The notes beneath the pieces are model-generated. The model saw only the letters and a list, made by a program, of their open reading frames with translations. It ran no database searches and had not been told where the DNA came from. DNA of 38,687 bases, counting the filler, from Sminthopsis crassicaudata (taxonomy: Eukaryota), in the NCBI RefSeq assembly GCF_048593235.1. It is 2 parts of 2 records of this genome, joined end to end, with 100 filler letters (N's around TTAATTAATTAA, not from the genome) between each part and the next. Parts side by side here need not be neighbours in the genome. Positions count along the whole stretch, not along the records: positions 1 to 25,839 come from NC_133620.1; 1 more part is not named here. One strand, written 5' to 3'. Below, one piece after another: positions 7,440-7,960 of the stretch (positions are counted from its first letter, which is position 1; each line of letters begins with the position of its first letter). The position numbers and the translations under genes are program-made.

Positions 7440-7960
7440 CGTATTATCCCCAGATTATGCTTTTTTCCCTTGACCCCCCTGATCCCCCTCCCCGATATTT
7501 AATTTACAGACCCCCCTTGTGACACGCAACCCTCCCTCTTTTTTTTTTTTTTTTTTTTTAGGATCCCTCCCCCCTCCCTCCAAGTCCCTTCACTTATTCC
7601 CCTTTTCCTTTTCCCTTTTCCTCTCCCCCCTTTTAATGAGGTGAGAGAAAATTCTCTGAAAAACAAATATGTTAATTATTTACTCTTTGAGCCTCTTCTG
7701 ATGAGAGTAAGATTCACACAATGATTCTCCCCCTCACTAAGTTCCCTCAGATATGGTGTATTTTCTATGTCTCTTCCTGGGATGTAGTTTCCCTCTTTTT
7801 ATCACTCCTTCCCCTTTTTCTGAACCGACCTCCTTCCCTTTACTACACCCCCCTTTTTTTCTTTTATATCAGTAAAATCAAATTATCCTTGAGTATTTTT
7901 TATATACCCACAACAGAGTTACAGTTCTCAAGGGTTCTGTGTACCTTTTTCTGTTTCTCT

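What the first reader, a model, noticed from the sequence alone, without database searches (positions are those of the whole stretch)
7440..7960. 521-nt L1 inter-ORF spacer with no AUG at all
Seen: ORF1 stop (7961) and ORF2 AUG (7439) are 521 nt apart, against about 63 nt in human L1. Scanning by eye, I find no CAT on the plus strand, so no AUG on the L1 sense strand, although about 20 CA dinucleotides are present in T-rich sequence. Several AUGs would be expected by chance. The first AUG after the ORF1 stop is the ORF2 AUG, in strong Kozak context. Known: human ORF2 is made by unconventional termination-reinitiation and tolerates loss of its AUG. Inference: this marsupial L1 lineage may use long-range post-termination scanning under selection against upstream AUGs, a different ORF2 translation mode.
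Basis: partly seen in the sequence, partly recalled or inferred. Interest (0 to 1): 0.72.

Follow-up and report, generated by a model that had tools for sequence, protein, structure and literature searches.

The report
AUG-free leaders in a dunnart L1
A young, full-length LINE-1 retrotransposon of a dasyurid marsupial (probably the fat-tailed dunnart) has no AUG at all in its 521-nt gap between its two genes or in its 851-nt 5' leader, which fits ribosomes reaching the second gene by scanning, though an older sister subfamily carries four AUGs in the same gap.

Summary
On the L1 sense (minus) strand, the ORF1 stop is at 7961-7963 and the ORF2 AUG at 7437-7439. The 521-nt spacer between them has 0 ATG against about 7 expected (P about 5e-5 by dinucleotide shuffles, below 5e-4 with local shuffles). 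The ORF2 AUG has A at -3 and G at +4.

New here: the 5'UTR of the same element is also ATG-free for 851 nt (about 6 expected). ATG is the only trinucleotide missing from both leaders (0 against 13.1 expected). The 3'UTR has 11 against 12.5 expected.

The roughly 0.5-kb spacer itself is already published for marsupial L1 (509 nt in Tasmanian devil L1-1_SH; opossum). Only its AUG-free state appears unreported.

The AUG-free state is not lineage-wide. A homologous spacer in an older dunnart subfamily (four copies) has four shared AUGs, each opening a uORF of 1-8 codons. One intermediate copy has four.

Best reading, at about 50%: purifying selection keeps both leaders clear so that scanning 40S subunits reach the ORF AUGs. 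For ORF2 these would be post-termination subunits. This looks like an optimisation in the youngest subfamily, not a requirement. Rivals are an IRES, or chance with a founder effect.

Other marsupial genomes could not be fetched.

The parts
3237..9981 (-). Full-length L1 insertion, about 6.75 kb, of a young dasyurid subfamily.
   Evidence: It is flanked by a 15-nt target-site duplication (AAATATTCCCTCTAT on the sense strand) at 9982-9996 and 3222-3236. It ends in a poly(A) tail and is 97-98% identical to a copy in Sminthopsis crassicaudata GCA_048593235.1 (L001).
9968..9978 (-). YY1 box CAAGATGGCGG at the extreme 5' end. It holds the only ATG upstream of ORF1 (9974-9972), which lies 7 nt from this copy's 5' end.
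   Evidence: The motif is described as common to mammalian L1 5' ends in PMC5381506.
9123..9973 (-). 5'UTR stretch of 851 nt with no sense-strand ATG.
   Evidence: 0 ATG observed against 6.1 expected, P = 5e-4. The antisense strand has 5. In 340 kb of dunnart sequence (both strands counted), the 5'UTRs of the window copy and L001 are the two longest ATG-free stretches. Of the other long stretches, the two checked (L008, window 22829-23326) are tandem repeats; three others (L003 x2, L007 B-subfamily 5'UTR) were not examined for repeats.
8712..9122 (-). ORF1 N-terminal part, 136 aa, with a coiled-coil region carrying a 42-nt x3.5 tandem repeat. The frame is broken in the A-run at 8716-8725.
   Evidence: L001 has an uninterrupted 387-aa ORF1, and the A-run there has a different length.
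7961..8707 (-). ORF1 C-terminal part, 248 aa, containing the RRM-like and dsRBD-like domains. The stop codon TGA is at 7963-7961.
   Evidence: Pfam PF02994 (5e-15) and PF17490 (3e-7). It is 98% identical to LOC141555273 of S. crassicaudata.
7440..7960 (-). The ORF1-ORF2 spacer (IGR), 521 nt, 70% purine, with 0 ATG.
   Evidence: Logan-contig depth over the spacer equals that of the flanking ORFs, so it is an integral part of the family. It is homologous to the spacers of older dunnart subfamilies.
7656..7944 (-). Cryptic GT-AG intron inside the spacer: donor AAAAAG|GTACAC, acceptor TTTGTTTTTCAG|AG.
   Evidence: A joint 7655/7945 is seen in contigs of two DNA runs at about 0.01% of the depth. 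This indicates rare integrated spliced copies.
7539..7559 (-). A21 run in the spacer, 100-120 nt upstream of the ORF2 AUG. Only the young subfamily has it; older copies have 3-4 A at this place.
7565..7588 (-). Canonical G-quadruplex motif GGGACTTGGAGGGAGGGGGGAGGG, ending 125 nt upstream of the ORF2 AUG.
   Evidence: Regex scan.
7467..7493 (-). Canonical G-quadruplex motif GGGGAGGGGGATCAGGGGGGTCAAGGG, ending 27 nt upstream of the ORF2 AUG. A G4 motif sits at the same place in L003B and L007.
3606..7439 (-). ORF2, an intact 1277 aa with APE endonuclease and reverse transcriptase domains. The AUG context is AATACGATGG.
   Evidence: Pfam PF03372 (9e-22) and PF00078 (6e-50). About half of the family depth reads ATGATGG here, from the variant 7441 G>A on the plus strand.
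3255..3605 (-). 3'UTR, used as the internal control. It is not depleted of ATG. It contains a G-rich G4-type motif at about 3325-3350.
   Evidence: 11 ATG observed against 12.5 expected.

Best explanation
The stretch is the normal, vertically inherited spacer of about 0.5 kb between ORF1 and ORF2 of dasyurid L1. In the youngest dunnart subfamily, both untranslated leaders that precede an ORF have been cleared of every AUG: the 5'UTR downstream of the cap-proximal YY1 box, and the spacer.

The most likely reason is purifying selection for an unobstructed scanning path.
1. 43S complexes load at the cap and scan 851 nt to the ORF1 AUG.
2. After termination at the ORF1 UGA, a minority of 40S subunits stay on the RNA and resume 5'-to-3' scanning.
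3. They have 521 nt in which to regain initiator tRNA.
4. They start at the first AUG they meet, the ORF2 AUG, which is in a strong context.

Shown here: the AUG absence, its specificity, the 3'UTR control, and the homology of the spacer among subfamilies. Inferred: the selection, and the scanning or reinitiation itself.

Because an older sister subfamily spread with four tiny uORFs in its spacer, AUG-freedom is an optimisation of ORF2 output, not a prerequisite.
For: - The spacer has 0 ATG against 7.0 expected, P = 5e-5. It stays below 5e-4 when shuffling is confined to 50-nt or 100-nt blocks.
- The 5'UTR has 0 ATG in 851 nt against 6.1 expected, P = 5e-4.
- ATG is the only trinucleotide absent from both leaders: 0 against 13.1 expected. 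After AT, G follows 0 of 34 times in the spacer.
- Controls lie near expectation: 3'UTR 11 against 12.5, ORF1 14 against 18.3, ORF2 78 against 84, antisense spacer 8 against 3.8.
- In 340 kb of dunnart sequence (both strands counted), these L1 leaders are among the longest ATG-free stretches; of the others, the two that were checked are tandem repeats.
- Most of the expected AUGs (4.7 of 7) fall in the first 290 nt of the spacer. That part is far from the ORF2 AUG, and an IRES landing close to ORF2 would not need it to be clear.
- Older spacers are also below expectation: 4 against 7 in subfamily B, and 4 to 5 against 8.3 in L003B. All persisting uAUGs open uORFs of 1-14 codons that end before ORF2.
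- Of the eight best-supported family-wide variants in the spacer, the only one that creates an ATG is adjacent to and in frame with the ORF2 ATG.
- The ORF2 AUG has A at -3 and G at +4.
- Reviews state that L1 5' leaders should be under selection against AUGs, and that the human 63-nt spacer may have to be scanned (PMC3894237; PMC5972666).
Against: - Only one evolutionary observation exists: two copies 99% identical in the spacer.
- The finding was picked out of a very large scan, so a look-elsewhere effect applies.
- Subfamily B (L003A, L004, L007, L008) carried 4 shared spacer AUGs and 1 to 2 5'UTR AUGs beyond the YY1 box, and still multiplied.
- In megabat L1, an AUG-free version of the long spacer retrotransposed less well than the native one in human cells (PMC4072516).
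- Reinitiation after a 387-codon ORF is considered rare without special tethering elements (PMC5972666). No UGGGA (TURBS motif 1) is present.
- The spacer is not structure-free: MFE is -108.5 kcal/mol with z = -3.0 against shuffles. Two canonical G-quadruplex motifs lie 27 and 125 nt upstream of the AUG and would hinder scanning.
Confidence: 0.5

Rival explanations
1. Internal ribosome entry. The purine-rich spacer recruits 40S subunits directly, as proposed for the A-rich region upstream of mouse L1 ORF2 and predicted in silico for the opossum spacer. Candidate elements are the A21 run, the conserved GGGAGGGAT and AAAGCATAA blocks, and the G-quadruplex motifs. Only a short stretch would then be scanned, and the absence of AUGs further upstream would be incidental.
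For: - The last 230 nt or so before the ORF2 AUG is AUG-free in the young subfamily and in the inferred state of subfamily B. All four shared B uAUGs lie at least 231 nt upstream.
- Sequence blocks near the 3' end of the spacer are conserved across subfamilies that are otherwise 25-35% diverged.
- A G4 motif sits 25-27 nt from the ORF2 AUG in three of the copies examined.
- The A21 run is present.
- Two programs predicted an IRES in 31-32 of 36 long spacers, including opossum (PMC5381506).
- A review judged reinitiation improbable for ORF2 (PMC3894237).
Against: - It does not predict the loss of the 4.7 or so AUGs expected in the first 290 nt.
- No Rfam IRES family, including the cripavirus IGR IRES, matches at E up to 10.
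- The last 160 nt has almost no conserved secondary structure: consensus energy -7.3 kcal/mol and a covariation term of -0.7.
- In silico IRES predictors are unreliable, as the authors themselves say.
Confidence: 0.2
2. Chance plus founder effect. The master copy of the young subfamily happened to lack spacer AUGs, and every descendant inherited that state. The 5'UTR absence is the ordinary constraint on any scanned leader and says nothing about the spacer.
For: - One subfamily amounts to one observation.
- Older homologous spacers are not significantly depleted (P = 0.08-0.45).
- The finding was selected from a very large scan.
- Mutating out the megabat spacer AUGs gave no benefit.
Against: - P is about 5e-5 to 1e-3 for the spacer alone under three null models. 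Even 100 independent long-spacer subfamilies examined would make this uncommon.
- The three spacer lineages together hold 8 AUGs against about 22 expected.
- No ATG-creating variant other than the in-frame ATGATG is among the best-supported family variants, though only 8 of the spacer variants were listed.
Confidence: 0.2
3. ORF2 is translated from a spliced, effectively monocistronic RNA. A donor upstream of or within ORF1 joins the strong acceptor TTTGTTTTTCAG|AG in the spacer. The AUG-free 5'UTR and spacer remainder then make the ORF2 AUG the first AUG.
For: - A functional-looking acceptor and a conserved AAG|GTA donor exist in the spacer.
- A GT-AG joined form (7655/7945) is present as DNA in two runs.
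- Spliced L1 RNAs and spliced integrated copies are documented in human (PMC5860796, listed).
Against: - The joined form makes up only about 0.01% of the depth.
- Such RNAs lack ORF1 and would leave only defective progeny, so they cannot drive selection on the full-length lineage.
- It does not explain the AUG-free first 305 nt.
- The stretch laid on the reads did not include the 5'UTR, so a 5'UTR-to-spacer joint was not tested.
Confidence: 0.04

Closest known systems
Tasmanian devil L1-1_SH and opossum L1-1_MD (marsupial L1 with a long ORF1-ORF2 spacer)
   Same: Same architecture: YY1-headed 5'UTR, ORF1, a spacer of about 0.5 kb (509 nt in L1-1_SH, PMC4408412), ORF2, 3'UTR. ORF2p is 86% identical to a Sarcophilus fragment and 69% to a Monodelphis protein. 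ORF1p is 76-81% identical to Sarcophilus proteins.
   Different: The papers read here say nothing about the AUG content of the spacer. All devil copies are reported dead, whereas this dunnart copy has an intact ORF2 and near-identical relatives.
Human L1 'unconventional termination/reinitiation' (Alisch et al. 2006, as summarised in PMC5381506 and PMC5972666)
   Same: Bicistronic RNA in which ORF2 is proposed to be reached by ribosomes that have finished an upstream ORF. Scanning of the spacer has been suggested.
   Different: The human spacer is 63 nt and dispensable. Here it is 521 nt, G-rich and A-rich, and conserved among subfamilies. Dependence on upstream translation and AUG-independence were not testable here.
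Megabat L1 family 1A long spacer (Yang et al. 2014, PMC4072516)
   Same: A spacer of several hundred nt (445 nt) that persisted in a successful lineage.
   Different: The megabat spacer contains AUGs. Mutating them all lowered activity in human cells, and the spacer was inhibitory there.
Mouse L1 ORF2 IRES (Li et al. 2006, as cited in PMC5381506 and PMC4072516)
   Same: An A-rich or purine-rich sequence upstream of ORF2 is proposed to recruit ribosomes internally.
   Different: Mouse has no real spacer, because ORF1 and ORF2 overlap or abut. No IRES assay exists for any marsupial spacer.
GCN4/ATF4-type reinitiation after short uORFs
   Same: Post-termination 40S subunits scan on, and a longer distance helps them regain the ternary complex. 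The 1-8-codon uORFs of the older subfamily are of this permissive type.
   Different: Here the first ORF is 387 codons long, and canonical reinitiation is thought to fail at that length.

Membership tests
Mammalian LINE-1 (L1) retrotransposon | ORF1 with the L1 RRM-like (Transposase_22) domain and the C-terminal dsRBD-like domain | tested here: met
   PF02994 at 5e-15 and PF17490 at 3e-7 on window 7964-8707.
Mammalian LINE-1 (L1) retrotransposon | ORF2 with an APE-type endonuclease and a reverse transcriptase | tested here: met
   PF03372 at 9e-22 (residues 10-229) and PF00078 at 6e-50 (residues 516-772). ORF2 is an intact 1277 aa.
Mammalian LINE-1 (L1) retrotransposon | Poly(A) tail and target-site duplication from target-primed reverse transcription; YY1 box at the 5' end | tested here: met
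   A 15-nt TSD at 9982-9996 and 3222-3236, an A-run at 3234-3253, and CAAGATGGCGG at 9968-9978 (motif per PMC5381506).
Human-L1-type unconventional termination/reinitiation | ORF2 translation depends on translation and termination of an upstream ORF and tolerates loss of the ORF2 AUG | not testable with these tools
   This needs reporter assays. Only the sequence signature of a clear scanning path was found.
Calicivirus/influenza B TURBS-type coupled termination-reinitiation | The restart codon overlaps or lies within a few tens of nt of the stop codon; UGGGA motif 1 lies upstream | tested here: not met
   The stop-to-start distance is 521 nt, and there is no TGGGA in the spacer. The region upstream of the stop inside ORF1 was not scanned.
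Dicistrovirus (cripavirus) intergenic IRES | Match to the covariance model with its three-pseudoknot fold directly before the start codon | tested here: not met
   No Rfam IRES hit at E up to 10 on 7300-8100, both strands. The consensus fold of the last 160 nt across six copies is -7.3 kcal/mol with negligible covariation.
A-rich cellular or mouse-L1-type IRES | An unstructured A-rich tract next to the start codon that confers cap-independent initiation | tested here: inconclusive
   An A21 run lies at -102 to -122 and GGGAAAAAAGCATAA at about -25. The region also carries G4 motifs, and activity cannot be tested here.
Short-uORF (GCN4/ATF4) reinitiation | The upstream ORF is short, at most about 30 codons | tested here: not met
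   ORF1 is 387 codons in the intact copy L001.

The most novel reading that the evidence does not exclude
The currently or recently active dunnart L1 translates ORF2 by long-range reinitiation. 40S subunits that have just finished a 387-codon ORF stay on the RNA and scan half a kilobase. The lineage has been purged of all AUGs in that path, from 4 to 5 in older relatives down to 0. This would be a natural eukaryotic case of efficient-enough reinitiation after a long ORF over a long distance. It would also give a handle on the unresolved question of how L1 ORF2 is made.
Probability: 0.35. Interest if true: 0.65.

Novelty: new variant of a known kind. Interest (0 to 1): 0.45.

Why it matters
How L1 makes ORF2p from a bicistronic RNA is still unsettled, with reinitiation and an IRES as the two candidates.

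The published objection to reinitiation in L1s with long spacers is that spurious starts in the spacer would make it inefficient and risky (PMC5381506). A recently active L1 whose 521-nt spacer has no AUG at all removes that objection for this element. Its 5'UTR shows the same signature and its 3'UTR does not.

This gives a clean natural substrate. Inserting AUGs, hairpins or upstream stops in reporters carrying this spacer would separate scanning from internal entry. The contrast with the older subfamily, which has four tiny uORFs, offers a built-in comparison.

If the depletion turns out to be chance, the finding reduces to an ordinary marsupial L1 with its known long spacer.

Tried and rejected
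**Fetching spacers from other marsupials**
- Wallaby, bilby and opossum loci were found through ORF1 proteins, but no DNA was served because the files were too large.
- A Sarcophilus protein was not on record.
- A MAG contig contaminated with marsupial DNA (L002) ends 25 nt after ORF1.
- An ENA contig (L009) starts at ORF2 residue 3.
- Another ENA contig (L010) gives only the first 158 nt of a spacer from an unknown marsupial. It holds 2 ATG and its age is unknown.

**Collection scans**
- Scans of genome contigs, metagenome contigs and viral contigs, by protein and by a 29-base marsupial ORF2 motif, gave nothing usable.
- The two metagenome loci L005 and L006 (48% and 26% identity) are not marsupial. 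L005 could be eutherian, possibly human, L1, so I did not analyse or compare either.
- Hits at about 50% identity include human L1 and were not used.

**Other attempts**
- The supplement of PMC5381506, which holds spacer sequences, is not held.
- Read laying lists only the 40 best-supported of 363 variants, so a full test of ATG-creating against other variants had no power: 8 spacer variants with about 0.4 ATG-creating ones expected.

**Rejected readings**
- ORF1-ORF2 fusion by readthrough or frameshift: every frame has stops.
- A tandem-repeat artefact behind the AUG-free stretch.
- A SINE or other insertion as the origin of the spacer: the spacer is homologous across subfamilies and, at its 5' end, to an unrelated marsupial copy.

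Full report
**What is there**

The window carries, on its minus strand, a full-length L1 of about 6.75 kb (3237-9981).
- It is flanked by a 15-nt target-site duplication at 9982-9996 and 3222-3236 and ends in a poly(A) tail.
- From its 5' end it has a YY1 box (CAAGATGGCGG, 9968-9978), a 5'UTR, and ORF1 starting at 9122. ORF1 is split into 136 and 248 aa by a frame break in an A-run at 8716-8725.
- The ORF1 stop is at 7963-7961. The spacer is 7440-7960.
- ORF2 is intact at 1277 aa (7439-3606), followed by a 3'UTR.
- Pfam finds the L1 ORF1 domains and the endonuclease and reverse-transcriptase domains.

ORF1p is 98% identical to an annotated protein of the fat-tailed dunnart, Sminthopsis crassicaudata. 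A second copy fetched from that genome (L001) is 97-98% identical over the whole element. The host is therefore a dasyurid, most likely this species.

**The observation**

- The spacer is 521 nt and has no ATG on the L1 sense strand (no CAT on the plus strand).
- AT occurs 34 times (ATA 17, ATC 9, ATT 8) and TG 21 times.
- Dinucleotide-preserving shuffles expect 7.0 ATG, with P(0) = 5e-5 in 20,000 shuffles.
- Shuffling within 100-nt or 50-nt blocks, which keeps local composition, still expects 6.7-7.0. It gave zero in none of 2,000 trials.
- ATG is the most depleted of all 64 trinucleotides.
- The stretch is not built from tandem repeats.
- The ORF2 AUG has A at -3 and G at +4.
- All three frames of the spacer carry 7-13 stops, so a fusion protein is excluded.

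**What the surroundings add**

I listed all ATG-free stretches on both strands of 340 kb (both strands counted) of dunnart DNA: the window plus five loci.
- The two longest were the 5'UTRs of the two young L1 copies, at 860 and 851 nt.
- The two spacers, each with the last 59 nt of ORF1, reach 580-581 nt.
- Of the other long stretches, those in L008 and at window 22829-23326 proved to be tandem repeats; two in L003 and the B-subfamily 5'UTR in L007 were not examined further.
- The 5'UTR has balanced base composition and 6.1 ATG expected, with P = 5e-4.
- Its only ATG sits inside the YY1 box, 7 nt from the copy's 5' end.
- Over the 5'UTR and spacer together, ATG is the only trinucleotide that is absent from both: 0 against 13.1 expected.
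- The 3'UTR has 11 against 12.5 expected, ORF1 14 against 18.3, ORF2 78 against 84, and the antisense strand of the spacer 8 against 3.8.

The depletion is therefore specific to ATG, to the sense strand, and to the two regions that lie in front of an ORF.

**Is the spacer a standard part of the family?**

Yes.
- Contigs from four public runs of the same organism cover the spacer at the same summed depth as the flanking ORFs. The exception is the A-run, where the tool skips repeats.
- About 160,000 contig pieces were laid in one run, and 24% of them are at least 99% identical to the window.
- Of the eight best-supported family-wide substitutions in the spacer, only one creates an ATG. It turns ACG into ATG immediately before and in frame with the ORF2 ATG, in about half of the depth.
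- Only 40 of 363 variants were listed, so this has little statistical weight.

**Is AUG-freedom a property of the lineage?**

No. Loci fetched through older annotated ORF1 proteins of the dunnart gave six more copies with spacers.

*Subfamily B: L003A, L004, L007, L008*
- The four copies are 93-97% identical to each other and 85% identical to the window in ORF2.
- Their spacer is homologous to the window's but shorter, at 455 nt.
- All copies that retain the region share ATGs at four positions. The source element of that subfamily therefore had them.
- The four open uORFs of 1, 5, 5 and 8 codons, and all lie at least 231 nt upstream of the ORF2 AUG.
- Four against about 7 expected is not significant.
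- Its 5'UTR also holds one or two shared ATGs beyond the YY1 box.
- Subfamily B carries deletions relative to the other copies, so it is a side branch rather than the direct ancestor.

*Other copies*
- L003B is a single intermediate copy, 74% identical to the window in the spacer. It has four uATGs plus the ATGATG form. Whether these ATGs are private to the copy is unknown.
- L003C, the sixth and oldest copy, has a decayed spacer with many ATGs and was used only as an outgroup in the alignment.
- Taken together, the three spacer lineages hold 8 AUGs where about 22 are expected. This suggests general but incomplete avoidance.

*Other species*
- The first 158 nt of a spacer from an unidentified marsupial (L010) shares the AAAGGTAAACAG start and has two ATGs. 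Its age is unknown.
- I could not obtain spacers from opossum, wallaby, bilby or devil.

**What is already known**
- The long spacer is published. It is 509 nt in Tasmanian devil L1-1_SH (PMC4408412).
- The megabat spacer is 445 nt. It inhibits retrotransposition in human cells, and an AUG-free mutant did worse than the native sequence (PMC4072516).
- The same 2016 paper argued that reinitiation across a long spacer would be risky because of spurious starts.
- A review noted that L1 5' leaders must be under selection against AUGs and judged reinitiation improbable for ORF2 (PMC3894237).
- Another review noted that even the human 63-nt spacer may need to be scanned (PMC5972666).
- None of the papers I read reports the AUG content of a marsupial spacer.

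**Mechanism**

The simplest account of an ATG-specific, sense-specific absence in both pre-ORF regions is selection for a clear scanning path. For the spacer this implies that 40S subunits arrive from upstream, most plausibly after terminating on ORF1.
- About 4.7 of the 7 expected AUGs fall in the first 290 nt. An IRES that lands ribosomes near ORF2 would not need that part to be clear.
- I put this reading at about 0.5.

Evidence on the other side:
- The older subfamily carried AUGs in its spacer.
- The megabat AUG-free mutant did worse.
- Reinitiation after long ORFs is rare.
- The spacer has a moderately non-random fold (MFE -108.5 kcal/mol, z = -3.0).
- Two canonical G-quadruplex motifs lie 27 and 125 nt before the AUG.

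The IRES alternative (0.2) has these points in its favour:
- sequence blocks and a G4 motif conserved at the 3' end of the spacer;
- an A21 run;
- the fact that the last 230 nt or so is AUG-free in the young subfamily and in the inferred state of subfamily B (L003B has one ATG at -75).

Against the IRES alternative:
- no Rfam IRES model matches;
- the last 160 nt shows almost no conserved structure.

Chance with a founder effect (0.2) cannot be dismissed, because the two young copies are one observation drawn from a very large scan.

A spliced ORF2-first RNA is a minor rival. The spacer contains a genuine-looking GT-AG intron (7656-7944), and its joined form exists as rare DNA copies. Such RNAs could not propagate the full-length lineage.

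**Verdict**
Selection against AUGs in the youngest subfamily is likely. 'A different ORF2 translation mode of the marsupial lineage' is not shown, and uniform AUG-freedom is contradicted by an older subfamily.
- The element is an ordinary member of marsupial L1 with its known long spacer. The AUG-free state of both leaders is, as far as I could find, a new detail.

- I did not build any consensus or repaired element.
- Loci L005 and L006 were not analysed. L005 may be eutherian, possibly human, L1.

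Noticed in passing
window 3237-9981; L001 5134-12901: The dunnart has a recently active L1. This copy has an intact 1277-aa ORF2, and a second copy has an intact 387-aa ORF1. The two are 97-98% identical, and 24% of about 160,000 laid contig pieces are at least 99% identical to the window. Published PCR and genome screens concluded that L1 activity was lost or strongly reduced in Dasyuridae, dunnart included (PMC4408412, PMC5010896).
   Followed up: partly
window 7656-7944 (minus strand): There is a cryptic GT-AG intron inside the spacer: donor AAAAAG|GTACAC, conserved as AAGGTAAA in older subfamilies and in an unrelated marsupial copy, and acceptor TTTGTTTTTCAG|AG. 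The joined form occurs in contigs of two DNA runs at about 0.01% of the depth. This points to rare integrated spliced L1 copies, like the human SpIREs.
   Followed up: partly
window 7441 (plus-strand G>A): About half of the family depth reads ATGATGG instead of ACGATGG at the ORF2 start, which adds a second in-frame Met codon. The site is a CpG. L003B also has the ATGATG form.
   Followed up: partly
window 7467-7493, 7565-7588 and about 3325-3350 (minus strand): Canonical G-quadruplex motifs occur in the spacer at 27 and 125 nt upstream of the ORF2 AUG, and a G-rich G4-type tract in the 3'UTR. L003B and L007 also have a G4 motif ending 25-27 nt before the ORF2 AUG.
   Followed up: partly
window 8699-8841 (minus strand): A 42-nt tandem repeat, 3.5 copies and 76-81% matching, lies inside the ORF1 coiled-coil region (ISELEKxKKxQExR units). 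This points to a recent expansion of the coiled coil.
   Followed up: no
window 22829-23326: A tandem repeat with a 71-nt period and about 7 copies at 98% identity sits next to an assembly gap (N at 22404-22543).
   Followed up: no
L008 12297-18498: Several kb of a T-rich tandem repeat (unit GTAGGGGAAGCTCTCCCACTTCTTGTTCTAACTCCTGTAAAGTGATTTTTTTTTTTTTGGTTTCTTCTCTCAGTCT, about 77 nt) lie downstream of a broken subfamily-B L1. It gives ATG-free runs of 670-840 nt on both strands.
   Followed up: no
L002 (GCA_021204895.1, JAJPYO010000209.1, 2533 nt): A contig filed under a 'Bacteroidales bacterium' MAG encodes a marsupial L1 ORF1 (345 aa, 67% identical to the dunnart protein). It is host DNA binned into a bacterial genome.
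   Followed up: no
L001 8350-9346: A 5'-truncated L1 3' end, 80% identical to the window's, is nested inside ORF2 of the otherwise young L001 copy.
   Followed up: no
L003 6001-70110: The annotated dunnart 'gene' for P0167 spans 64 kb, but its first exon is simply the ORF1 of a subfamily-B L1. This is likely an annotation chimera built on a retrotransposon.
   Followed up: no
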